Shown: positions 47,201 to 61,478 of the stretch, one piece after another
Layout: the number at the start of each line of letters is the position of its first letter
How positions within the stretch are numbered: the stretch's first letter is position 1
Assembly: GCF_032191835.1 (NCBI RefSeq)
Contig: NC_083237.1
Coordinates: 22,568,001 to 22,632,000, forward strand
Length of the DNA: 64,000 bases
Direction of reading: 5' to 3'
DNA from: Heteronotia binoei
Lineage: Eukaryota
Made by a program: the position numbers and the translations under genes
The notes under the pieces: generated by a model
Seen by the model: only the letters and a program-made list of their open reading frames with translations
Databases searched by the model: none
Told to the model about the DNA's origin: nothing

Positions 47201-49660
47201 GAAGTTTACAGCTGTGACACAGAAGAGGGGGTTAGAGCCATACATTTAGTCTCTGGAGGGCCAGATACTTCCCAGATGTGGGACAATTAAAACTGAGACT
47301 GCGCCAGGACGAGTCCCCAGATATATTCCAAGCATCTTATTCACTGCTGAAAAAAAGTTAAATGATGTCACTGAACATGTGCAGGGGGCCTTGATCACTC
47401 ATGCCTGACGGCTAGCCTGCAAACTTCTGGATACAGGAAAGGGTTTCTAGGCAGGCAAAATTGAAAAAGCTAACCAGCTGAGACACCTTGGCCACACCTG
47501 GGAGTATATAAGCCCCCCCCATCAGAGCAAAGCAGCCTATTTAGAGTGCCAGAAGTCCCAAGTGCTCTGATAGGATATGCCAAGATTCTGACTCCTCCTC
47601 CTCTGCCACAGGCTCCGCCCTCTGGATATAGCATTCTTGCATGCCATCCACAACAAAGTCAATATTGTGCCTGTAATTGGAAAGGCTGATTGCTTGACTC
47701 TAACAGAGGTACAACAGAAGAAAGAGAAGGTGAGGCGCCTGAAGGGTGTGGTGGAAGGGAACCTCAAATCTCAGGGTCCTGGAATTGATTAATGGAGCAG
47801 AGTGATGAATGGAGCAGAGAAATCCTCCATCCAAAAGTAATAAAACCTACTTGAAATATCATGCCAGGAGAAAAACAGATGTCTCTGCTGCTGGGACTCT
47901 TGTATCCCGGTTTTACCCCTCTACTCCCACAGCTGCCTTTCATGGCTGTTTAACTGCTTGTTTCAACTCCTTTGACCCTGCAGATCCGGCAAGAGTTAGA
48001 AGAAAATGGGATCACCATTTATGAGTTTCCTGAGTGTGACTCGGATGAAGATGAAGAGTTCAAAGCTCAGGATGCTGAGATGAAGGTGAGAATTGGATGG
48101 TTGGCAGCTGAGCTCTTGTGTGTTCGGGGTTTCTTCAGAGGGAGATGGAGCACTAAAACTTACATACCCAATTTGTGTTATCCCTGTAGCATAGCATCCC
48201 CTTTGCTGTCATTGGATCTAGCCAGGTTGTTAGAGAGTTGAAGGACAAAGTATTCCGAGGAAGGCAATATCCCTGGGGAACAGTGGAAGGTAAGCTGCAT
48301 TCATGGGAGGGACCAGCAGATGGCACTGTGCCACAGGAAGCCGCTGATGCTACTTCCCCTTTTGTCACCCCCTAGTGGAGAATTCTGCTCACTGCGACTT
48401 TCTCAAACTTCGGAACATGCTGATTCAAACCCATATGCAGGACTTAAAGGATGTAACCCATGAAGTCCATTATGAAAACTACCGTGCACAATGCATCCAG
48501 AGCCTGACCAGAACTGGGGCTCGGGATCGCAGCAGCCGCGCGTAAGAAAATTCTGGGGTGCCAAAATCATCTTCGAGGGGAGGGACACTGGTCCAAGAGG
48601 ATAAAGACTCAATTAAGGAATCAATAAAAAGGGAGCCTCTTTTACAATTTAAGATTAGATAATCTATAACTTTAGAGCAATGTTCCCTCTAAGCTGCAGA
48701 ATCTTGTGAGCAAAAATTCTTTGTGAGCTACTGGTATTAAAGTGGGCTGCTGCATAAATTATCGTGCTCTGGGGCCATTTTTCCTGAGCTACGACAAAAG
48801 TATGTGAGCTGGAGGCTAAAAATCTGTGCGCTAGCTCACTCTAACTCAGCTTAGAGGGAACACTGCTTTAGAGTATCATTGGGTCTACCTCACAGTATCT
48901 TAAAAATGGCTAGCAATTGCAAGCGTCATTAGGTAATCACCAGACGGTCAATAATCAACTGCTTTGTAAAGACTGAGAAAGAGAGGTTTGTGTGAAGGTG
49001 AGAGAACTTTCTGGGAACTGATACTTGTCATCCGGTTAACTGGCTTTTATCAGATTGACCAGGAAACCTGCTTTACATGAAAAGGAGCTGGGTTTTATAA
49101 AATCCTTGTTAGTCATCAACAAAGGACAGGTTTCAACATAGGGCCAGGGGTGGGGGTGGAGAAAATGCTGCTCAGAGTGGTTGAACACAAAACTGATGAC
49201 TGAAAGGGAGGCCTTTACAAGGAGGCAGGATTCCTGGCTTCTAAGCAGCTCTCTGTTGCCTTTCTAGGAAGCTCTCTCGTCAAAGTGCTACTGAGCTGCC
49301 ACTTCTGCCCCTGAATGCTGAGACAGAGAAATTAATCCGTGAGAAAGATGAGGAGGTGAGTCTCTGGGGAATGGCCCTTTTGCCTGAAGCAGGTCTGTGC
49401 TTTTTAAAATCCTGTTTTCTGCTGGAGTCCGTGATCAGAGATCAGGGGGCAACAGACTCCTGTACGGTCACCTGGCCCCTTACTGGCCGCTCAATCTCAG
49501 CAGTGGGCAAAGTGTCAACAACTGCCGTCTTAACCCACCTCCCCCTTGGGCAATCTCAGCCTCTATCTCTTTTGCCCAGCTCCGCCGAATGCAGGAAATG
49601 TTACAGAGGATGAAGGAACAGATGTTGCAGAGTCAAGTGGAGCAATCAGACAGTCTCTGA
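44251..49660 (+). CDS. SEPTIN1: Septin-1, complete, 11 coding exons
   Basis: Exons 44251-44253 (ATG|GTAAGT), 44385-44475, 45540-45626, 46253-46376, 47054-47188, 47612-47729, 47984-48085, 48190-48289, 48376-48541, 49268-49355 and 49580-49660 are all GT/AG and in phase. Motifs: [18 protein letters not shown] (G1), DTPG (G3), VIGKAD (G4), [23 protein letters not shown], matching recalled SEPT1 termini. Confidence 0.93.
44385..44475 (+). CDS. SEPTIN1: SEPTIN1 exon 2
   Basis: [30 protein letters not shown]. Confidence 0.93.
45540..45626 (+). CDS. SEPTIN1: SEPTIN1 exon 3 (P-loop)
   Basis: [29 protein letters not shown]. Confidence 0.93.
46253..46376 (+). CDS. SEPTIN1: SEPTIN1 exon 4
   Basis: [40 protein letters not shown]. 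Confidence 0.93.
46805..46980. mobile_element. Palindromic MITE (CAGGGCTTTTTT family) in SEPTIN1 intron 4
   Basis: TTGTAGCAGGAACTCCTTTGCATATTAGGCCAC and its reverse complement. Confidence 0.75.
47054..47188 (+). CDS. SEPTIN1: SEPTIN1 exon 5
   Basis: [44 protein letters not shown]. Confidence 0.93.
47612..47729 (+). CDS. SEPTIN1: SEPTIN1 exon 6
   Basis: [39 protein letters not shown]. Confidence 0.93.
47984..48085 (+). CDS. SEPTIN1: SEPTIN1 exon 7
   Basis: [34 protein letters not shown]. Confidence 0.93.
48190..48289 (+). CDS. SEPTIN1: SEPTIN1 exon 8
   Basis: [33 protein letters not shown]. Confidence 0.93.
48376..48541 (+). CDS. SEPTIN1: SEPTIN1 exon 9
   Basis: [55 protein letters not shown]. 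Confidence 0.93.
48678..48865. mobile_element. hAT MITE (CAGTGTTCCCTCTAAGCT family) in SEPTIN1 intron 9
   Basis: TIRs; perfect TSD CTTTAGAG. Confidence 0.88.
49268..49355 (+). CDS. SEPTIN1: SEPTIN1 exon 10
   Basis: [29 protein letters not shown]. Confidence 0.92.
49580..49660 (+). CDS. SEPTIN1: SEPTIN1 exon 11 (last coding exon)
   Basis: [26 protein letters not shown]. Confidence 0.92.
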   Translation, partial: LRRMQEMLQRMKEQMLQSQVEQSDSL

Positions 49661-49909
49661 AAGATACCAAAGGAACTTCCTGCATTTTCCCCCTGACTTC
49701 CATATGGCAAGTGACTGAAGAAACTCTTTAGCACTGGAGATCACAGGGTCAATGTTGACGTTCTGGGGGTGGGGGGAAGAGAAGTAGGGATAGAAGACTC
49801 TTAGGCAATCCAGTTGGAGATTTTCCTATCTCTTACTCATGTATACATCCTTCTTTCTTCTCAGTATAATCAAAGCTGTGATGATAGTTCACAGGCGTGC
49901 AATTGCTTC

Positions 49910-49915
49910 AATAAA
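49910..49915 (+). terminator. Probable SEPTIN1 polyadenylation signal
   Basis: AATAAA 250 nt after the stop codon. Confidence 0.6.
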
Positions 49916-51074
49916 CTGCAAGAGCATTCAAAGAAAGTAAAATATATTTTTGCACAATGTAAAGTTCATGGAGACATCTAAAGTTCACAACTGATTTACC
50001 CACTTTTCATACTGACATCTGTTTCTCACCGAAGACTTGTCCCCAAAGGTACCTGTCCGTCAGGGTGTCTCTACCCTATCTATTCTCAAACAGATGTGTC
50101 TCTACGAATCCATTTCCTCTGCCCCCCCAACACCTGCAAGAACTATCTGTTTATCTAGAAATACACACCATGCTGTCCGCAGACCCTCTACAAACAGAGA
50201 GGCTGCAATATTACGGCAGACAGTTCTCTGAGGTGATATGGGTAATTTTAAGAACTGAGTAGCTAGTGGTAACTCAACCAGGCGATCAACCAGACGGGAC
50301 ACAGTTCTCAAGCAAAGAAAACTTTATGCTAGAGTAATGGACTGTGAGTCTGCATTCTAATGCTAAACCCAAAACAACCAATTGAGGGGGGGGGGGGGGA
50401 GTGTGAACAAGGACACAGTGGAGGCAACCAGCCTGAGCAGGGGAATAGATTGTGGGGGGGCAGATGTGCTGCTTAACCCTTTCCCTTCCTGCTCTTTTGT
50501 CACTCAAAATCCGTCACCATTCAGCTCCTTTTCCACTCGTGGATAGAAAGGATGCCTCTTCCCCGGTGGCTGGAACCAAAAGGACTGTGCAGCCTTCTCC
50601 CCTGCCAAAACTGGCTGCTTTCCCCAGGAATATACACAGTAAAGCTGCCATATGCAATCTGCTCTGTAACATCCAGCTTTCTCCTGACACTTGACCAGCC
50701 CAAAGCCACAGCATCTAGAAGTTCAGCTGCCTTTTCAAAGCCATGTCTGAAAGGGCAAGACGGACTTTTGCTTGCTCGGTTAGTTTCTAGAGGCAACTGA
50801 AGTATATGACAACTTGTAAAGAGGAGCAAGGAAGTAACAGCAGACCAGCTTATGCTTCCCCTCCCAACCCATTACGCACTAATTGGATATCAGGACAATG
50901 ATATCCAATCCAATGGCTAAAATGAGATAGGGGCATGCTTGGAACTGAAAATCTGGATGAGGCCTAACATCACAACCGCATACTCTGTCCCTCCTGACTT
51001 GAAACTAGAGCCAAAGAACCTTTCAAGGCCACAGTTAAGTTTCTGTCCTGCTCCGGAACAGGCAGGGGCAAGTC

Positions 51075-53535
51075 CTACTGCTGATACTCCGTGTACTTCT
51101 TGGACGAGCCGTAGACTTTCTCGGCCGGGTATTTGAGGTGATTCTTCTCTATTTTACGGAGGGCGGCAGAAGGAAGGTCCACATGGCACTTGTCAGCCAG
51201 GGCCACCAGGTAAATGAGGACGTCACTGAGCTCATCGGAGAGGGCTTCACGCTCTGATTCCATCCATCCCGGTAGGCCTTCAGGGGTTTCAGGCCTCCAC
51301 TGGCTGAGAACACACAAACAAAGCTGGGTGAAGCCTCAGCTGGGCCCAGGTTATGAAGAGCCTGAAAGGCAGCGTGTAATATTGAAAACCAAGAGGTGTT
51401 GGGGTCTGACCCTAATTTGAAGTTTCATCTTCTGCCCCACACACCATTCTTTGTCGTAGCTCAAGTCATCTAGGCTAGATGGCCATCTGACAGCAATGAA
51501 GATCCTGTGAATTTAGGGGGAAGTGTTTACGAGTTTCCTGCATTGTGTAGGGGGTTGGACTAGTTGACCCTAGAGGTCCCTTCCAACTCTATGATTCTAT
51601 AAAGCATTTTATATGGAACTGCCATGTGTTTGTTGATCCATCTATCTCCTCAAGACTTTATCTCAAGAGCAACAAATTATGTGTCATTTTTTCATTACTG
51701 TGCGATTTTCAAATCTGTGGAACGTTATGAGCGGGGCTTTTTTTATAGCAGGAACTCCTTTGCATATTAGGCCGCACACCCCTGATGTAGCCAATCCTCC
51801 AAGAGCTTTCAGAGCCTACTGTAAGCTCCAGGAGAACTGGTTACATCAGGGGGTGTGGCCTAATATGTAAAGGAGTTCCTGCTAGGAAAAAAGCCCTGGT
51901 TATGACTGTGGTTTCTCTTGCGGGAACAGGGGTTCAGGCAGGCAGGTTTCCTCACAATAAACACAGAAATCATGATTAGGAGAAGATCAGCATCTTGCAT
52001 CTTTGCTTACAGCAACAAAACCCAGCCATGTAAATGCAAACAAACAATTTACACTTGACTGCACCATGTATGTGTTGTGCCATTTAAGCTCAGGTAAATG
52101 CTTTATCCATGTTCTAAGAGGTGGGCTGTGGTTCAAGAAGACAGCATCTGTTTTGTACGCAGAATGTCTCAGGTTCAATCCCTGCCATCTCCAGTTAAGA
52201 GGATTATGTTGTGGGCAGTGTTTCCTCTAAGCTGAGCTCATATGAGCTAGCTCAGTTTTTTAGCCTCCAACTCACACATTTTTGTCTTAGCTCAGCCTGC
52301 TCAGGAAGCACGGCCCCCTGAACACACTAATTTATGCAGTAGCTCAAAACTTTCATGTCAGCAGCTCACAAAGTAGAATTTTCGCTTACAAGACTCTACA
52401 GCTTAGAGGGAACACTGGTCGTGGATGACATGAAAGACTTCTGCCTGGGACACTGGAGAGAGATTGCCAATCCGAATAGACAAAACTGACTTTGATGGAC
52501 CAATGGACTGGTTTTGGCAAAGTAATGCCTAGCCATCCATTTAATTAAAAAGCCTAAGCACAGGCAACCCTCAGCTCCCAAACTCCCGTCTCCAGGTAGG
52601 GTTGTGGCTTCTTCCAAATTAAAATGTGATGGGAGTATGGAGATCAACACCGCCAAGGACATAACTATCGGCCTCCCCCTTCTTCCACCCCCTGCCCCTT
52701 CCCAAGTATTGCTTTTCGGCAGGCTGAGCAGCAATTCCCTCCTTGGTACTCACAAGAGCTCAGCCACTTCCCCCACCTCCCCAACGAGGGCAAGAAGCAG
52801 ATTCCGAGGCTGGTGGTACTTTCCCCAGCCCCTCTCGGCAGCAAAGGCAGACTGGAGGCTTCGGCTGGGGGAGAGAAAGGAAAAGAGGGATGAGGCCAGG
52901 AATGGAGGTTGTGCATGTGCACATGTGCATACAGAAGGCTTCAGAAAGAATGGGGGAATGAAACAGTTGGAACACCTGAAGATGAACAAGGTTATGGGGA
53001 CGCTCACTCTCTCCTAAACCACATTATGGGGAGACGGAATGCAAAGTGGGCAGCCCATAAACAAAACTCATGCAACACTATGTCACATGACATGACCTTG
53101 AATCAAGACCAACCGAAATATTATGAGACTTTTTAGATTTTGCTATGGGACGACATAGCGACATCACAGCAAAATCCAACTCCTTTTCCAGGGTTTTCAA
53201 TTGAGCCAGAGCTCTATTCACATATATCTGTATATGCACATCAGCAACATGTGCAAGTCAAGGGCTGGAAATTGCCACTCTGATACAGCTGCTTCCTTCC
53301 CTTGAATGGACACTCAGCCTACCCAGAATGCTTTGTGTGATGCGGCCTTATCAACTGAGACTGAGTTCTGGGGTGGGGTAGGGTGGAAGAGGGGCAAGGA
53401 ATCTTACATGTCTTCCAAGGTGGGCTCACTACTGAACTGAAACGTCTTTGCTGAATTTCCAGCCCCATCTTCCACTATCGCTTCATCTGTTTTTTCTACT
53501 TTTATATCCAAAGAACTGGCTGAAGAGTGCAGAGC
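51075..53535 (-). CDS. DCTPP1: dCTP pyrophosphatase 1 (MazG-like), conserved exons
   Basis: Exons 53408-53535 (..TFQFSSEPTLED), 52754-52864 (RSLQSAFAAERGWGKYHQPRNLLLALVGEVGEVAEL) and 51075-51303 (QWRP..DELSDVLIYLVALADKCHVDL..KYTEYQQ*) are GT/AG and in phase. There is no in-frame ATG in 53408-53535. Confidence 0.93.
51732..51898. mobile_element. Palindromic hAT MITE (CAGGGCTTTTTT family)
   Basis: Long inverted arms; TSD GTTATGAG/GTTATGAC (7/8). Relatives at about 17829-17975, 24668-24852, 26690-26796, 27880-28040, 29236-29356 and 46805-46980. Confidence 0.8.
52216..52417. mobile_element. hAT MITE (CAGTGTTCCCTCTAAGCT family) in a DCTPP1 intron
   Basis: TIRs; TSD GTTGTGGG/GTCGTGGA (6/8). Confidence 0.82.
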
Positions 53536-53880
53536 CTAGTGAGGAAAAATAATAATCATGTAACTCTTAGTTTGCACCAAAGAATGAAGCAACTTCCCCA
53601 TCAGTTAAAAACTGGACAGCAGGTAGCTCTGTAGGTGAGGCACTTGGCCCTACTCCATGTGCCACTGGAGCTTTCGGGTAGAGAAGAGCAGCTCAGTTCA
53701 AGTTGGGGCACTGTGGCCACAGCCCACCACCATCCTGGTTCTGGGAATCAGGTAGTAGGCAGCCAATCTCATATTGCTGCCTGCTTTAAAGATCTGCCGT
53801 TCTGCTCTTTTGTTAAGATAACCTGGTGCTCAGGGAAGCCACCAAGCTCGGAACTGCCCATCCACCAGGCCCAGATTTAC

Positions 53881-53901
53881 CTGCCTTTGAAACAGACACA
53901 T
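53881..53901 (-). CDS. Candidate 21-nt micro-exon (MCLFQRQ), phase 0-0
   Basis: gtttgtgtttccattgctgtag|ATGTGTCTGTTTCAAAGGCAG|gtaaat. Confidence 0.3.
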
Positions 53902-54234
53902 CTACAGCAATGGAAACACAAACACACAGCAGAACCCACCTCTCTTTCAGCATTACAATTTACTCACAGGATACACCCCATCTATTAGTTACATCTTCCC
54001 TTGTGTGGTGCTCAGAGACCCAGAAGACTTCAAGGTACCAGACCCAGCTTCTGTTTACGCTCCTCGGAGGGTAATGCGCTGTCCAAGAGCCAGGGCTCAC
54101 ATACCCAAAACCTGTCTTGATTTTTATTCTCCATATTGCAAGCCAAACAAAGCCCTTCAAATCCCTCCTACTCTTAGCTGATCTTTTTCCTACACTGGAC
54201 TTCTTGAATGGTGGCATGTTTGAGCATACCAAGC

Positions 54235-54410
54235 TAGCCCAGCCTCATTAGATCTTGGCAGCTAAGTAGGGTTAGTAAGCCCAGGCTAATCTTGGATGGG
54301 AGAGCACCAAGGAAGCCAGGGTCATGACACAGAGGCAGGCAATGGCAAACTACCTCTGAGCATCTCTTGCCCTGAATACCTCAAGGGTTAACTACGTGAC
54401 AGGACTTTCA
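54235..54410 (+). mobile_element. 5S rRNA-derived SINE in the predicted DCTPP1 intron 1
   Basis: TAGATCTTGGCAGCTAAGTAGGG..CTTGGATGGGAGAGCACC plus the GGCAATGGCAAAC tail. Confidence 0.68.
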
Positions 54411-54929
54411 ACTACCACCACCACCAGAGGGGCTAGAGAAGCAAGGATATGACTTCAGCCAGGCCTCAGGGCTCTCTCCCACAAGTTCCTGTGCAGAAGC
54501 AGCTTCTAGGTGGGAAATGGCTTGAACCCCACACATGGTTCATTACATATTATGAATATTCATATTCTCATTTTGCCACATCTCCCCTCAGCAAGACTCT
54601 GGTGCCAGCTGTGCGCAAACAGGAATGTGACAGATTATATACATGGTTTGCAGTCAGATTTGCCAAAGGGATTCTGGGTCAGACATTTACCTAAAGTACC
54701 AGCAATGCTTTGCCACTCATTCGTGCACTACCCTCGAAGTTGGAGGGAGCCCATCCTACTCATTTCAAGTTCCCAAGCCTTTTTAGCTATCTATTTTGCT
54801 TTCTCTCCACTTGGCCAAGCCTCCATCACAGGATCGCTGTGCGGATAAAATGAAAGAAGAGCCATGTACACCACCTTGAGCTCCCTGGGAACAGGATAAA
54901 CATGACAGAGCATATACAGCATGACCCAC

Positions 54930-55900
54930 GCCGAGAGAGAAAGATACTCCACCTTATCGGCTTCAGTCGAGCCATCGGTTTCTAAAAACACAGCTCGCTT
55001 TTGGTTCTGCATTCGAATGCTGCGCATGTGCCCTCCTCCCGCCGCGTGCTGCCTCACATCGCACACCCCACCGTGAGAGATGGAGAAGTCCCTATTGCAA
55101 GCACTGCAGCGCGCTTTTAGAGCGTTATCCTGCACTTTGTGCAGCCACGGAAACCCTTTCTCCCACTCCTGCCGGTATTTCTGCATCCGCCTGCCTTTCT
55201 TGGCTGGAGGCTGTGCATGCGGCGATGCCATGACCCTCGGAAAGGAGCCCGGAGCTCTTCACAATCCACCCGGCTCGGCAGCAGCGGGCATGGAAGTGGA
55301 TTCTGATTGGATAGCAGCGGCATGGCAGGGAGGAAGGACAATCTGTGACCCAATCAAAGTTGGGAAACGTAAGGGGGTATCTGCACCCAATCGCTGAAAA
55401 GTAACGAAGGCGGGAGGAGCAGGTTGTAAAGCTTCTCACGAGAGGACAGGCAGAGAGAGTGTCCAATCAGAAGCCACCTGTAGCTAATACATTTTTTTTT
55501 TAATAAAAGGTAGGGAGGAAGACTCACAAAGGAAACTTTTATATGTTGAAATTTTAACCTTGATTCTGGAAAAGGAAATAATTTTCTTACAAAGAGACCG
55601 AAAGTATTCTGAACTCACAATTCCCACCAATGGTAGCCAGACTCTGGAATATGCAGACCCAATAAGAATGCAGTATTCTGGTTTCTCTTTTGCGATTGGT
55701 GTTGACTCTTGAACACACACACACAGGCTAGCCAATGGAGAAGGGCGGGTGAATCTGCTTTAGGAAAACACGCGCTAGACCTGGTAGCGCGCGAAAATGT
55801 GGTGTTGCGTGGAGTCCAAGTGTATTACCGAAGGGTTTTTTTCTTCACGCAGTGGCCTCTTTTTGGGGTATAGGTTTTTTTCTTCCGTCATGCAGAGCAT
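54930..55900. promoter_or_regulatory. CpG-rich, probably bidirectional promoter region between DCTPP1 (-) and QPRT (+)
   Basis: CpG-dense compared with the flanks; several CCAAT boxes (about 55305, 55350, 55387, 55463, 55733); GC box near 55743; E2F-type GCGCGAAA at 55789-55796. Confidence 0.6.
54953..55231 (-). CDS. Candidate first coding exon: NLS-like motif plus BED/TTF-like C2H2 zinc finger of transposase type; predicted to splice to DCTPP1
   Basis: Strong-Kozak ATG (GTCATGG) in a CpG island. Peptide: PPAKKGRR, KYRQEWEKGFPWL, C-x2-C-x16-H-x5-H (CSAC..FSISHGGVCDVRQHAAGGGH). Phase-0 donor AAG|GTGGAG is non-consensus at +4/+5. Confidence 0.6.
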
Positions 55901-56729
55901 GTGGTTATTAAACAATTTATATATATAAAAAAATTGGCAGTTCCCATCCTTAACGCAAGACCCCTGGCTACAGATAGATCCAGGTGGGCAGCCGTTTTGG
56001 TCTGAAACAATAGAACAAAGTTGGAGTCCAGAGGCACCTTTAAGACCAACAAAGATTTATGGCCAAACTTGTTTGACGTCAGAGGCACATAAAATAAACG
56101 TCAGATGTTTGAGAGCCACAAGACATGAATGTCAGATGTTTGAGAGTTGCAAGGAAGGAAGGCAAAAAGGCAGGAGTGGAAAGAAAGCAACTTTAACTTT
56201 AAATGCATTCTCCAAGACACAGGCTGACTGGGCTTAGAGAATTTGTTTAAAGAGAGAAATGCCTTCTCCAAGCCAGGTGGTGGGGGCTTCAAGAGCCATA
56301 TGTGTGAAAGAGCCACATGTGGCTCCTGAGTCTCAGTTTGGCCACCCCTGGTCTGAAGGTGCTGCTGGATTCCCACTTTGCAAAATCCCTGTATTATAAT
56401 TATTTGGGAAAGAGGCTTTTCGATAGACATCCTGCTTCCCTGGCAAGTTGCTTCTTTTCGTTTCCTCCCTGTTTCAGGGAGGGCTGCCAACATTTCTTGC
56501 TTAATTCCTTCTCCTTCACTAGGGCGCCTGTCTGTCTCCTGGATCAGTTCAGGGTCGGAGGCTTTCATTGCTGTTTTTCATATTCCTTTTTATATTTTAT
56601 GTAATATGCAATGACAACAATTTGAAAAATTAACAGTCTGCCTATGGAGAGAGGGGAAACCAGTAGTTAAAGGCATTTTCCAATTGTTATTGCTTTGCCT
56701 TTTAATATTTTAAACAGTAGCTGCTTTGG

Positions 56730-59814: not shown

Positions 59815-60855
59815 CATGGATCATATATGTGTTCACTGTCACCTGTGAAAGGGGCATTAGATGAAATCCAGAAGTAGCAGCAGCAGAAGTAACCTTTATT
59901 ATAACTAACTAAAAAAAAAAATCACAGAATAGTAAGCAAGTTTTTGAATTCACTCTGTGTGCAAAGTACCAGCAGTTCATAGCTGACCTATGGCAACCCC
60001 ATAAGTTTTTCAAGACAGGAGACGTACAGAGATGGTTTGCTGCTGCCTGCCTTTGCTTAGCACCCCTGGACTAAGCCTCCCATCCAAGTCCAACCAGGGT
60101 CAACCCTGCTTAGCGTCTGAGATCTGGTGAGATGAGACTAGCCTGGGCCATCCAGGTCACGGTTTTGAACTTTCTACTTCAGTGACTTTTCCATTGGTCC
60201 TAATAAGGTCACCAGTGGCACAATGGCTGTTTGTCCAGGAAACTGCCTGAGTCCAGATTTTCCCAAGTGGTGTCTCTGACTATGGGGATGATTGGCAATT
60301 TGTAACTATAAGCCAAATAAGGACCTAAACATAACCCCATAATTTTTCTTTATTTTCGTATTTATTTTCATCCCAGGGGATAGCTGGGAGATAAATGTAT
60401 AAATGTATTCAGCCCCAGATTCACTCCGTAGAAGCAGATGTTGTAGGGCAGTTGTCTTGAAGCCTTGGGTCAGGCCCTTCTGGTGAGTCCCAATTCCCTG
60501 TAGCTCTGCCATTCTTTTGCTACCTTTCAGAAGGACTTGATAACAGAGTGCTATGGTATATCCCTTGTTTCTCTTTGTACAATTGCTGAGAAAAGCAGTG
60601 GAACAGCGAGGTCCGTAGTCCTGGCTTTGACAATGGCTGGTCAAAATTCTGGCTCCCTCTCTTCCTGTCATGTGACTCTGTCATGTGCCTTCTGAATCAT
60701 GCTTGCAGTTCAGTGAGCCTCAGAACTGGAAACACTGAAAACCACTGCTGTTGAGCGTGTGATGGGAATCTTCATTACTTACTTCTATTTGGTCTTCCAC
60801 TGGCTTCTTAGAATGTTGTCTGGTATATTTTTGCCATTTCTCCTTCCCAGCTTCC

Positions 60856-61407
60856 ATGGCCTCACGTCCTGACCTTTCACACCTTCTCCCCGCTGCCCAG
60901 TTGCGCCAACTGGCCCGTGAGTGGCTGCAAGAAGATGCTCCTAGCTTTGACTATGGAGGCTACGCTGTGGGCGATCGACAGGAACGAGCCATGCTCCTTT
61001 GCAAGTCTCCAGGAATTCTGGCTGGCTTTCCTTTCTTCCAAGCTGTCTTTGCTGAGGTGGGCTGCTCCGTGGAGTGGTTCCAACCAGAGGGAGTATGGGT
61101 AGAACCGATTACCCGGGTGGCTGAAGTCCGTGGGCAAGCCAAAGACCTCTTACTTGGTGAGCGGGTGGCTCTGAACTGCATGGGACGGTGCAGCGGTATC
61201 GCCACGCTGGCAACAAAGGCATGTCGGGTAGCACAAGAAACTGGCTGGCATGGAGAAGTGGCTGGAACAAGAAAGACCACACCTGGATTCCGTCTCCCTG
61301 AGAAATATGCCCTCCTAGTGGGAGGAGCGTCCTGCCACCGTTATGATCTGGGAAGTCTCATCATGTTGAAGGATAACCACGTGTGGGCTTCTGGCAGCAT
61401 CACACAA
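60856..61407 (+). CDS. QPRT: Quinolinate phosphoribosyltransferase, first coding exon; the remainder lies beyond the window
   Basis: WLQEDAP, LLLGERVALN..RCSGIAT, AGTRKTTPGFR, HRYDL..MLKDNH. Acceptor tccttcccag at 60850 and donor CAA|GTGGGT at 61408. Confidence 0.93.
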
Positions 61408-61478
61408 GTGGGTGTTTCGTTGATGTCTCACTTTTCCTCCATAATTGTACAATGCATGTTGCAGTTGAAAGGCTGCTC

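What the first reader, a model, noticed from the sequence alone, without database searches (positions are those of the whole stretch)
51075..55231. Candidate host-transposase fusion: a BED/TTF-type zinc finger spliced onto DCTPP1
Seen: the DCTPP1 exon matching mammalian exon 1 (53408-53535, ending FQFSSEPTLEDI) has no in-frame ATG and starts at a phase-0 acceptor (ttattatttttcctcactag). About 1.4 kb upstream on the same strand, inside the CpG island, a strong-Kozak ATG (55231) opens 93 codons. These end at a phase-0 AAG|GT (54953). Joining 279+128+111+229 nt gives 747 nt, an unbroken 248-aa ORF: NLS-like motif, C2H2 finger, linker, MazG-like dCTPase. Established: DCTPP1 is a MazG-family NTP pyrophosphatase, and the human protein as I recall it has no zinc finger. 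Transposase DNA-binding domains are known to be captured by exon shuffling in tetrapods. Inference: a lineage-specific fusion that could tether nucleotide-pool sanitising activity (dCTP, 5-methyl-dCTP) to DNA. I do not recall this fusion being described. Caveats: the GTGGAG donor is weak, and the micro-exon at 53881-53901 offers an alternative ATG.
Basis: partly seen in the sequence, partly recalled or inferred. Interest (0 to 1): 0.88.

Follow-up and report, generated by a model that had tools for sequence, protein, structure and literature searches.

The report
Transposase zinc finger fused to DCTPP1
In this gecko, and in diverged form across lizards and snakes, the nucleotide-cleaning enzyme DCTPP1 starts with an extra exon that was once the zinc finger of a hAT "jumping gene"; geckos keep it under strong selection, so it is a real, old and apparently undescribed gene fusion.

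Summary
Four minus-strand exons (54953-55231, 53408-53535, 52754-52864, 51075-51303) join into a 747-nt, 248-aa ORF. This ORF is exactly the public model "dCTP pyrophosphatase 1 [Heteronotia binoei]".

The same four-exon layout, with a phase-0 first exon, holds in all nine squamate loci I mapped. A spliced 1483-nt transcript contig from a skink-like species carries finger and MazG domain in one ORF. Fish, coelacanth, frog and mouse DCTPP1 have no finger.

The finger belongs to a large family that heads hAT transposases. More than 100 copies sit in long open frames in this genome, at only 33-38% identity to the DCTPP1 exon. Pfam does not recognise the finger, which explains why a Pfam-based fusion screen did not list it.

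- **Geckos:** the exon evolves as slowly as the catalytic exons (dN/dS 0.11-0.19) and stays basic (pI about 9.5-10).
- **Other squamates:** it is relaxed (0.25-0.61) and acidic, and it is eroded in snakes.

The alternative micro-exon ATG is not conserved among geckos. Junction reads in this species could not be obtained. DNA tethering remains an inference. Verdict: a real fusion, a new member of a known kind, of moderate interest.

The parts
55232..55520 (-). Promoter and 5' UTR region. It is CpG-enriched and carries CCAAT-type boxes (ATTGG / CCAAT).
   Evidence: GC is 0.48-0.57 and CpG o/e 0.59-0.76. Sequence read. A few RNA reads fall in 55126-55523. Partly alignable to the Gekko upstream flank.
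54953..55231 (-). Exon 1: start codon plus 93 codons encoding the hAT-transposase-derived zinc finger. It ends at a phase-0 donor, AAG|GTGGAG.
   Evidence: It is 100% identical to the N-terminus of P0151. It has 637 family hits among 1.84 billion representatives. dN/dS among geckos is 0.11-0.19.
55007..55183 (-). Folded finger core, residues 17-75: helix, three strands, helix, with ligands C42, C45, H62 and H68.
   Evidence: AlphaFold2 model m5a4c14aa032f has pLDDT of about 90 over this stretch. C42 is invariant, and C45, H62 and H68 are at least 90% conserved in 66 family members.
53536..54952 (-). Intron 1 (1417 nt). No transposase remnant is detectable in it.
   Evidence: tblastn with six full-length family transposases matches only the finger exon, one alignment running 7 codons past its donor to 54932. 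Raw RNA reads give zero depth in the unique intron bins.
53881..53901 (-). Candidate 21-nt micro-exon with an alternative ATG. Judged a chance feature.
   Evidence: The acceptor and ATG are deleted in Gekko kuhli. The donor and frame are broken in Eublepharis. The region is absent from the 631-nt intron of Paroedura.
53408..53535 (-). Exon 2 (128 nt): acidic, disordered linker plus the conserved FxFS-EPTLEDI start of the DCTPP1 core. It has no in-frame ATG and a stop lies immediately upstream.
   Evidence: Residues 86-123 have pLDDT of about 30 in the full-length model.
52754..52864 (-). Exon 3 (111 nt): first half of the MazG-like domain, including the E-x-x-E metal motif (E165, E168).
   Evidence: These are invariant columns in A2. 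Aligns to mouse RS21-C6.
51075..51303 (-). Exon 4 (229 nt including the TAG stop): second half of the MazG-like domain (E197, D200) and the C-terminus.
   Evidence: Pfam MazG-like PF12643 hits at E = 4.1e-11. Also.

Best explanation
This is the DCTPP1 gene of a gecko; its product is identical to the public Heteronotia binoei protein.

**Origin (inferred).** In a squamate ancestor, the first coding segment of a hAT transposase was captured as a new first coding exon. That segment is a basic, BED-like C2H2 zinc finger. Its phase-0 donor lies on a Lys|Val codon pair (AAG|GTG) that the closest full-length transposase also has. It splices to an acceptor just upstream of the old DCTPP1 coding sequence, and the rest of the transposon has decayed.

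**Product (shown).** The protein has two domains: finger (residues about 17-75), a disordered acidic linker of about 40 residues, and a MazG-like dCTP pyrophosphatase domain with its metal-binding residues intact.

**Evolution (shown).** In geckos the finger is kept under purifying selection as strong as on the enzyme. It retains the charge and zinc ligands of the transposase family. In other lizards it has become acidic and evolves faster, and in snakes it is partly eroded.

**Function (inferred, about 40% likely).** In geckos the finger still binds nucleic acid or chromatin. Mammalian DCTPP1 is a tetramer, so four fingers per enzyme could concentrate hydrolysis of dCTP and modified dCTP in the nucleus or on DNA. 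In this species the exon also supplies the only conserved start codon.
For: **The ORF and its public models**
- Exon arithmetic and splice sites check out.
- The spliced ORF equals P0151, 'dCTP pyrophosphatase 1 [Heteronotia binoei]'.
- Five more gecko models are 82-90% identical over the full length.
- Finger-bearing DCTPP1 models exist in anguid, agamid, iguanian, lacertid and skink lizards and in snakes. Fish, coelacanth and Xenopus proteins are 139-216 aa without a finger.
- Mouse RS21-C6 aligns from its residue 18 to gecko residue 120.

**Gene structure and transcripts**
- The four-exon structure is conserved in 9 loci: 255-294 nt (always a multiple of 3), then 128/122, 111, and 226-232 nt (229 in seven of nine).
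- Logan contig L001 is colinear with the four Tiliqua exons with introns removed. It has an in-frame stop 13 codons upstream of the ATG.
- In this species, sparse RNA reads lie on exons 1-4 and none on unique intron 1. One RNA run holds 0.23 of the exon-1 words.

**Transposase origin**
- The finger has 637 hits in the representative library.
- Long hits and a resident 653-aa ORF carry Dimer_Tnp_hAT.
- Relatives are named hAT dimerisation, transposase or DUF4371 proteins.
- This genome has 124 matches, most in 532-689-aa open frames at 33-38% identity.

**Selection and properties**
- NG86 dN/dS for exon 1 is 0.11-0.19 in geckos, against 0.12-0.17 for exons 2-4. In non-geckos it is 0.25-0.61.
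- Exon-1 pI is 9.5-9.95 in geckos, against a family median of 9.5 and 4.9-6.7 in other squamates.
- The AF2 finger core has pLDDT of about 90. The full-length model shows a disordered linker.
- The metal ligands E165, E168, E197 and D200 are invariant.

**One capture event**
- A family HMM built without DCTPP1 scores non-gecko exon 1 at 22.6-39.9 bits.
- The tree places all nine squamate exons in one neighbourhood. One clade is not rejected (AU p = 0.171).
Against: - No read spanning the 54953|53535 junction was obtained for this species. Only about 6% of each RNA run was read, exon depth was below 3, and the single read-laying run is spent.
- The gecko donors are weak (GTGGAG, GTTGGA).
- The Gekko japonicus model uses a different junction.
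- Pfam does not recognise the finger. Structural matches are weak: Foldseek against PDB gives E >= 0.1 and the best AFDB match is 3e-3. The top PDB matches are RNA-associated U1/matrin-type fingers, so the ligand may not be DNA.
- The putative NLS KKGRR is deleted in Sphaerodactylus.
- Non-gecko squamates tolerate acidification, a 2-3-residue deletion of the HGG motif and, in snakes, loss of a zinc ligand. The finger function is therefore dispensable in most of the clade.
- No outgroup between squamates and mammals could be examined (tuatara, turtles, crocodilians, birds).
Confidence: 0.78

Rival explanations
1. The finger exon is retained mainly because it supplies the promoter-proximal start codon after the ancestral ATG was lost. 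The zinc finger itself has no targeting role, even in geckos, and is just an N-terminal extension.
For: Exon 2 of this species has no in-frame ATG and an in-frame stop directly upstream. Outside geckos the exon keeps its frame while its sequence drifts: dN/dS is 0.25-0.61, it turns acidic, and snakes lose the W motif and a ligand.
Against: In geckos dN/dS is 0.11-0.19, equal to the catalytic exons. All four zinc ligands, the HGG motif and the basic charge of the transposase family are kept. A mere start-codon donor would not need this.
Confidence: 0.15
2. The finger is functional but is not a DNA tether. It binds RNA or a protein partner, or regulates the enzyme's oligomerisation or activity.
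For: The best PDB fold matches are U1/matrin-type fingers of SF3A2, the TUT1 finger and the JAZ finger, which contact RNA. The finger is joined to the enzyme by a long flexible linker.
Against: All these fold matches are weak (E >= 0.1). The sequence family is the N-terminal finger of hAT transposases. AFDB neighbours include the hAT-derived proteins C17orf113, ZNF862, GTF2IRD2, ZBED4/6 and CGGBP1. Seven relatives reach zf-BED. From established knowledge, that domain binds transposon DNA.
Confidence: 0.2
3. Geckos and the other squamates acquired their finger exons independently, or the gecko exon was later replaced by a fresh transposon copy, so there was more than one capture.
For: Gecko exon 1 is 46-60% identical to fish and lamprey family members but only 14-24% identical to non-gecko squamate exon 1. 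The free tree is 25.6 log-likelihood units better than the tree with one squamate clade.
Against: Position, orientation, phase and the downstream acceptor are the same in all nine loci. Non-gecko exons fall next to the gecko exons among 149 rows, and one clade is not rejected (p-AU 0.171). The long non-gecko stem fits relaxed constraint.
Confidence: 0.08
4. The fusion is an annotation artefact. The finger exon belongs to a separate short transcript sharing the CpG island, and DCTPP1 is translated from another start such as the 53901 micro-exon ATG.
For: No junction read was seen in this species. The donor is weak. The micro-exon has canonical splice sites.
Against: A spliced transcript contig in a skink-like species carries both parts in one ORF. 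Frame and phase are conserved in nine loci, with purifying selection. The micro-exon is destroyed or absent in three other geckos. The first Met after exon 1 lies inside the MazG domain.
Confidence: 0.04

Closest known systems
Host-transposase fusion genes of tetrapods (Cosby et al., 'Recurrent evolution of vertebrate transcription factors by transposase capture', bioRxiv 10.1101/2020.05.07.082677)
   Same: A transposase DNA-binding domain is joined in frame to host exons by splicing. It is then conserved at a syntenic locus under purifying selection.
   Different: - The host partner here is a metabolic enzyme, a nucleotide pyrophosphatase, and not a KRAB, SCAN or other transcription-regulating domain.
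- The finger sits at the N-terminus as the first coding exon and replaces the host start codon.
- That screen required Pfam transposase domains, which this finger lacks. DCTPP1 is absent from its text and from the 10 held supplementary files.
Mammalian DCTPP1 / RS21-C6 (PDB 2A3Q, 2OIG, 6SQW, 7MU5)
   Same: Residues 120-246 align to mouse residues 18-144 at E = 1e-46. The E-x-x-E and E-x-x-D metal motifs are kept. The Pfam families match: MazG-like and MazG.
   Different: The mammalian protein is 170 aa and has only 17 residues before the aligned core. The gecko protein has 119 residues there, including a folded zinc finger and a disordered linker.
hAT transposases with DUF4371 and the hAT dimerisation domain, and their domesticated relatives (C17orf113, ZNF862, GTF2IRD2, ZBED proteins, CGGBP1)
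   Same: The finger belongs to the N-terminal finger family of such transposases. Its predicted fold weakly matches the corresponding regions of these domesticated proteins.
   Different: Only the finger survives. No catalytic or dimerisation part remains in the locus. Identity to the resident transposon copies is only 33-38%.
SETMAR (SET methyltransferase fused to a mariner transposase; recalled from memory, not tested here)
   Same: An enzyme domain is joined to a transposase-derived DNA-binding part by exon capture in one vertebrate lineage.
   Different: SETMAR keeps the whole mariner transposase at the C-terminus, and is primate-specific and much younger. Here only a hAT finger remains, at the N-terminus, and the fusion is shared across squamates.

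Membership tests
DCTPP1 / MazG-like all-alpha NTP pyrophosphatase | Match to the MazG-like domain model above its curated cut-off | tested here: met
   The exon-4 peptide scores 43.4 bits against PF12643, whose cut-off is 27. PF12643 and PF03819 are precomputed for P0151.
DCTPP1 / MazG-like all-alpha NTP pyrophosphatase | Conserved acidic metal-binding motifs (E-x-x-E ... E-x-x-D) and alignment to solved DCTPP1 | tested here: met
   E165, E168, E197 and D200 are invariant in 26 sequences. The alignment to mouse RS21-C6 has E = 1.3e-46.
DCTPP1 / MazG-like all-alpha NTP pyrophosphatase | Orthologous position in the genome | tested here: met
   The same neighbours are present in the gecko loci: SEPTIN downstream, and QPRT upstream in Paroedura. 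Their flanks align to window 47984-51070 and 60762-61459.
DCTPP1 / MazG-like all-alpha NTP pyrophosphatase | dCTP / 5-modified-dCTP pyrophosphatase activity | not testable with these tools
   Needs an enzyme assay.
Host-transposase fusion gene | Contains a domain of transposase origin | tested here: met
   Family members carry Dimer_Tnp_hAT or DUF4371. More than 100 transposon copies with the finger are in the same genome.
Host-transposase fusion gene | Fused in frame to host-derived coding sequence at a conserved locus | tested here: met
   The exact spliced ORF was reproduced in 9 squamate loci.
Host-transposase fusion gene | RNA evidence for the exon junctions | tested here: inconclusive
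   A spliced mRNA contig exists in a skink-like species. In this species only sparse exon-confined reads were seen, with no junction listed.
Host-transposase fusion gene | Purifying selection on the captured domain | tested here: met
   dN/dS is 0.11-0.19 among four geckos and 0.25-0.61 among five other squamates.
BED zinc finger (Pfam PF02892) | Match to the zf-BED model | tested here: not met
   There is no zf-BED hit for the 93-aa peptide even at E <= 10. Only 7 of 66 aligned relatives match, best at 8e-6. It is BED-like, not a demonstrated member.
BED zinc finger (Pfam PF02892) | C-x2-C ... H-x3-5-H ligand pattern on a beta-beta-alpha core | tested here: met
   The ligands are C42, C45, H62 and H68. 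The AF2 model has strands at 30-32, 39-42 and 47-50 and a helix at 56-64. The fold match to ZBED2 2DJR is weak (E = 0.55).
TTF-type zinc finger | Match to a TTF-finger model | not testable with these tools
   No TTF model is in the libraries offered. The only pointer is a weak AFDB fold match to ZNF862 residues 136-224 (E = 0.057).

The most novel reading that the evidence does not exclude
In geckos the transposase finger still recognises DNA, possibly motifs of the cognate hAT family, of which more than 100 copies remain in this genome. It would bring a tetrameric dCTP / modified-dCTP pyrophosphatase onto chromatin. Nucleotide-pool sanitation, for example removal of 5-methyl- or 5-halo-dCTP, would then be spatially targeted to defined genomic sites or replication zones. 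That would be an enzyme-targeting host-transposase fusion, as opposed to a transcription factor.
Probability: 0.15. Interest if true: 0.8.

Novelty: new member of a known kind. Interest (0 to 1): 0.55.

Why it matters
Host-transposase fusions are a recognised route to new vertebrate genes. Catalogued cases are almost all transcription regulators and were found through Pfam domains. This case differs in four ways.

- **It was missed by domain-based screens.** The finger has no Pfam match, so such fusions are probably under-counted.
- **The partner is a housekeeping enzyme.** A DNA-binding-type module is joined to an enzyme of dNTP-pool control. That raises the testable idea that nucleotide sanitation can be targeted within the nucleus.
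- **It offers a natural comparison.** Geckos keep the finger under strong constraint, other lizards let it drift, and snakes erode it. This can be used to ask what the finger does.
- **It shows lock-in.** The captured exon replaced the host start codon, so it has become structurally locked into an essential gene.

Tried and rejected
- **Raw RNA reads on 50350-56300.** Only about 6% of each run was read and exon depth was below 3. Intronic repeats dominated and no exon-exon joint was listed.
- **RNA-run search with exon 1 alone.** One run holds 0.23 of the words, which is weak.
- **Pfam on the finger.** Only sub-threshold zinc-ribbon noise.
- **Profile search of PDB sequences with the family alignment.** The best hit is the HIV-1 integrase N-terminal zinc domain at E = 0.1. 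This is not significant and I treat it as chance.
- **Foldseek against PDB.** Nothing at E <= 0.001.
- **Search for transposase remnants or TE DNA around the exon.** None found.
- **Micro-exon ATG at 53901 as the real start.** Rejected because it is not conserved in other geckos.
- **Looking for the fusion among the 150 best finger-family representatives.** None carries a MazG domain, because the DCTPP1 cluster is represented by a diverged sequence.
- **Outgroup test.** The age of the capture is bounded only by squamates against mammals, frog and fish.
- **Literature searches.** DCTPP1 combined with zinc finger, lizard or transposase found nothing relevant.

Full report
**1.

On the minus strand an ATG at 55231 (G at -3, G at +4) opens 93 codons that end at AAG|GTGGAG (54953).

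The exon at 53408-53535 follows the acceptor ...cctcactag. That tag is an in-frame stop, and the exon has no in-frame ATG. Exons 52754-52864 and 51075-51303 complete the gene. Joining 279+128+111+229 nt gives 747 nt and an unbroken 248-aa ORF.

The surrounding 54800-55600 is CpG-enriched (o/e 0.6-0.76, against 0.04-0.28 in the flanks). The 21-nt micro-exon with an ATG at 53881-53901 also exists.

**2. The ORF is already a public gene model**

A search with the finger found a 248-aa protein named 'dCTP pyrophosphatase 1 [Heteronotia binoei]' (P0151). It is 100% identical over the finger. Five further gecko models were found: Gekko kuhli, G. japonicus, Paroedura picta, Eublepharis macularius and Sphaerodactylus townsendi.

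The six gecko proteins are 82-90% identical to the window's protein (mean column identity 90%). C42, C45, H62 and H68 are invariant.

**3. The fusion is squamate-wide**

A search with the full protein returned finger-bearing DCTPP1 models of 236-306 aa. They come from Elgaria, Pogona, Phrynocephalus, Podarcis, Tiliqua, Sceloporus and Anolis, and from pythons, boas, colubrids, elapids and vipers. Non-squamate hits were 139-216 aa and covered only the enzyme half; those I aligned (sturgeon, coelacanth, Xenopus) have no finger.

Mouse DCTPP1 (170 aa, PDB 2A3Q and 6SQW) aligns from its residue 18 to gecko residue 120 at E = 1e-46. The mammalian protein therefore has no room for a finger.

I fetched eight further loci and mapped each protein exactly. 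Every one has four exons:
- exon 1 of 255-294 nt, always a multiple of three;
- exon 2 of 128 nt (122 in Python);
- exon 3 of 111 nt;
- exon 4 of 226-232 nt (229 in seven of the nine loci).

Neighbouring genes are shared too: a septin downstream, and QPRT upstream in Paroedura. Their flanks align to the window.

**4. Transcript evidence**

A 1483-nt Logan contig (L001, from one public run) holds an uninterrupted 256-aa ORF with finger and MazG domain. It aligns colinearly to the four exons of the Tiliqua locus with the introns removed. An in-frame stop lies 13 codons upstream of its ATG. This is a spliced mRNA of the fusion in a skink-like species.

For the window's own species the evidence is thin:
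- A handful of reads fall on each of exons 1-4 and the 5' UTR, and none on the unique parts of intron 1.
- No junction reached the listing threshold.
- One RNA run holds 0.23 of the exon-1 words.

The junction in this species therefore rests on the public model and on conservation, not on reads that I saw.

**5. The finger comes from a hAT transposase**

The 93-aa peptide has 637 significant relatives among 1.84 billion representatives. None of the 150 best carries a MazG domain.

- Long relatives carry the hAT C-terminal dimerisation domain.
- The closest full-length one is a lamprey protein, P0017. Its relatives are named hAT-dimerisation, transposase or DUF4371 proteins in fish, coelacanth and insects.
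- The gecko genome itself has at least 124 matches. Most lie in 532-689-aa open frames and are 33-38% identical to the DCTPP1 exon.
- One such copy encodes a 653-aa ORF with Dimer_Tnp_hAT.

The DCTPP1 exon is thus single-copy and old, while relatives of its source are still abundant. Nothing else of a transposase survives around the exon, and transposon DNA does not match the locus.

P0017 continues ...EADKV... across the point where the gecko exon ends ...EADK|GTG. This suggests that the donor arose from a Lys-Val codon pair inside the transposase ORF.

**6. What kind of finger it is**

- **Sequence.** Pfam does not recognise it. Among 66 aligned family members, 7 reach zf-BED (best 8e-6), 12 reach zf-C2H2_2 and one reaches zf-C17orf113.
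- **Model.** AlphaFold2 with that alignment gives a confident core (pLDDT about 90 for residues 17-75): a short helix, three strands and a helix running into a long helix.
- **Fold matches.** These are weak. In the PDB they are U1/matrin-type fingers of SF3A2, the TUT1 finger, JAZ, ZBED2 and ZBED3 (E >= 0.1). In AlphaFold-SwissProt they are Su(var)3-7, C17orf113, ZNF862, GTF2IRD2, ZBED4/6 and CGGBP1 (best 3e-3).

I call it a BED-like C2H2 finger of hAT transposases, not a demonstrated zf-BED or TTF member.

The full-length model shows the finger, a disordered stretch (residues 86-123, pLDDT about 30) and the four-helix MazG core.

**7. Selection differs sharply between clades**

Values are pairwise Nei-Gojobori dN/dS and exon-1 pI.

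| Group | dN/dS, exon 1 | dN/dS, exons 2-4 | pI of exon 1 |
|---|---|---|---|
| Four geckos | 0.11-0.19 | 0.12-0.17 | 9.5-9.95 |
| Five other squamates | 0.25-0.61 | 0.10-0.18 | 4.9-6.7 |
| Transposase family (median) | - | - | 9.5 |

Non-geckos have lost the HGG motif through a 2-3-residue deletion and gained an acidic insert. Snakes lack the KY..WE segment, and several have lost the second histidine.

**8. One capture or two?**

A family HMM built only from non-DCTPP1 sequences scores non-gecko exon 1 as follows (search space 1e6):
- Tiliqua 39.9 bits;
- Elgaria 38.7 bits;
- Sceloporus 34.9 bits;
- Anolis 22.6 bits;
- Python 11.2 bits, not significant.

These exons are therefore family members in their own right. 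In a 149-row tree all nine squamate exons fall in one unresolved group together with P0017. Forcing them into one clade is not rejected (p-AU 0.171). Given identical position, phase and acceptor, a single capture on the squamate stem is the simplest reading. Independent capture or replacement is not excluded.

**9. The alternative start is unlikely**

The micro-exon region aligns to intron 1 of other geckos at about 74% identity, but its features are not kept:
- in Gekko kuhli the acceptor and ATG are deleted;
- in Eublepharis the donor is replaced and the frame is broken;
- in Paroedura the intron is only 631 nt and lacks the region.

In this species the first Met after exon 1 lies inside the MazG domain. 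Exon 1 is therefore the only conserved source of a start codon.

**10. How it most likely works**

*Shown:*
- a two-domain protein with an intact metal-binding motif (E165, E168, E197 and D200 invariant);
- a constrained, basic, zinc-finger-like N-terminal domain in geckos.

*Inferred:*
- The finger binds nucleic acid or chromatin.
- Mammalian DCTPP1 is a tetramer (established for RS21-C6; not tested here), so the enzyme would carry four fingers. These could concentrate dCTP / modified-dCTP hydrolysis in the nucleus or on DNA.
- I put this at about 40%.

Rivals are a non-DNA ligand (RNA or protein), or a role merely as start-codon donor. The drift outside geckos shows that the finger function is dispensable for most squamates.

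**11. Comparison and novelty**

This fits the host-transposase fusion class described by Cosby et al. (bioRxiv 10.1101/2020.05.07.082677). That screen required Pfam transposase domains. DCTPP1 is absent from its text and from its 10 held supplementary files. Other literature searches found nothing on this fusion.

The gene model is public, but the transposase origin of its first exon appears undescribed. The fusion partner, a nucleotide-sanitising enzyme, is unusual for the class.

**12. Limits**

- I saw no junction reads for this species.
- No tuatara, turtle, crocodilian or bird locus could be examined.
- dN/dS is pairwise only.
- Structural matches are weak.
- All functional statements about the finger are inference.

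Noticed in passing
G000 genome-wide; example L020:2059-4017 (G000:C21:148692000-148698000): The gecko genome holds at least 124 matches to the finger. Most sit inside 532-689-aa open frames with near-identical scores. One copy encodes a 653-aa ORF with a hAT dimerisation domain. This looks like a young, possibly still mobile hAT family.
   Followed up: partly
P0013 (XP_063355484.1) and P0020 (XP_056132361.1, Lampris incognitus): The same finger heads other RefSeq models: a STAT1-alpha/beta-like protein with STAT domains, and a ZBTB17-like protein of the fish Lampris incognitus. Many short fish ORFs (P0004-P0022) lose similarity right after the D-x-V that corresponds to the gecko donor AAG|GTG. 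This hints that the finger segment has been captured repeatedly at the same cryptic donor.
   Followed up: partly
P0001, P0002, P0003, P0006, P0034: Proteins of about 900-1800 aa carry 2-5 tandem copies of this finger. P0002 also carries a hAT dimerisation domain.
   Followed up: no
P0153 (Gekko japonicus), P0162 (Rhineura floridana isoform X2), P0175 (Pogona): Alternative gene models exist. The G. japonicus model reads 11 codons through the exon-1 donor and omits part of exon 2. The Rhineura isoform leaves exon 1 before the CxxC and so lacks the finger. A 143-aa Pogona model lacks the N-terminus. Finger-less isoforms may therefore exist in some species.
   Followed up: no
window 51345-51941 and 52141-52538 (intron 3 of DCTPP1): High-copy repeats collect thousands of RNA reads and many inverted joints in all four runs. 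They swamp the genic signal.
   Followed up: no
window 60762-61459 and 47984-48679: Flanks align to the neighbours of other gecko DCTPP1 loci. A QPRT exon lies upstream, head to head (87.5% identity to Paroedura). The septin-gene side lies downstream (89.6% identity to Gekko).
   Followed up: partly
window 51058-51375: One 318-nt contig of a metatranscriptomic run crosses the exon-4 acceptor unspliced. It is either pre-mRNA or DNA carry-over in that library.
   Followed up: no
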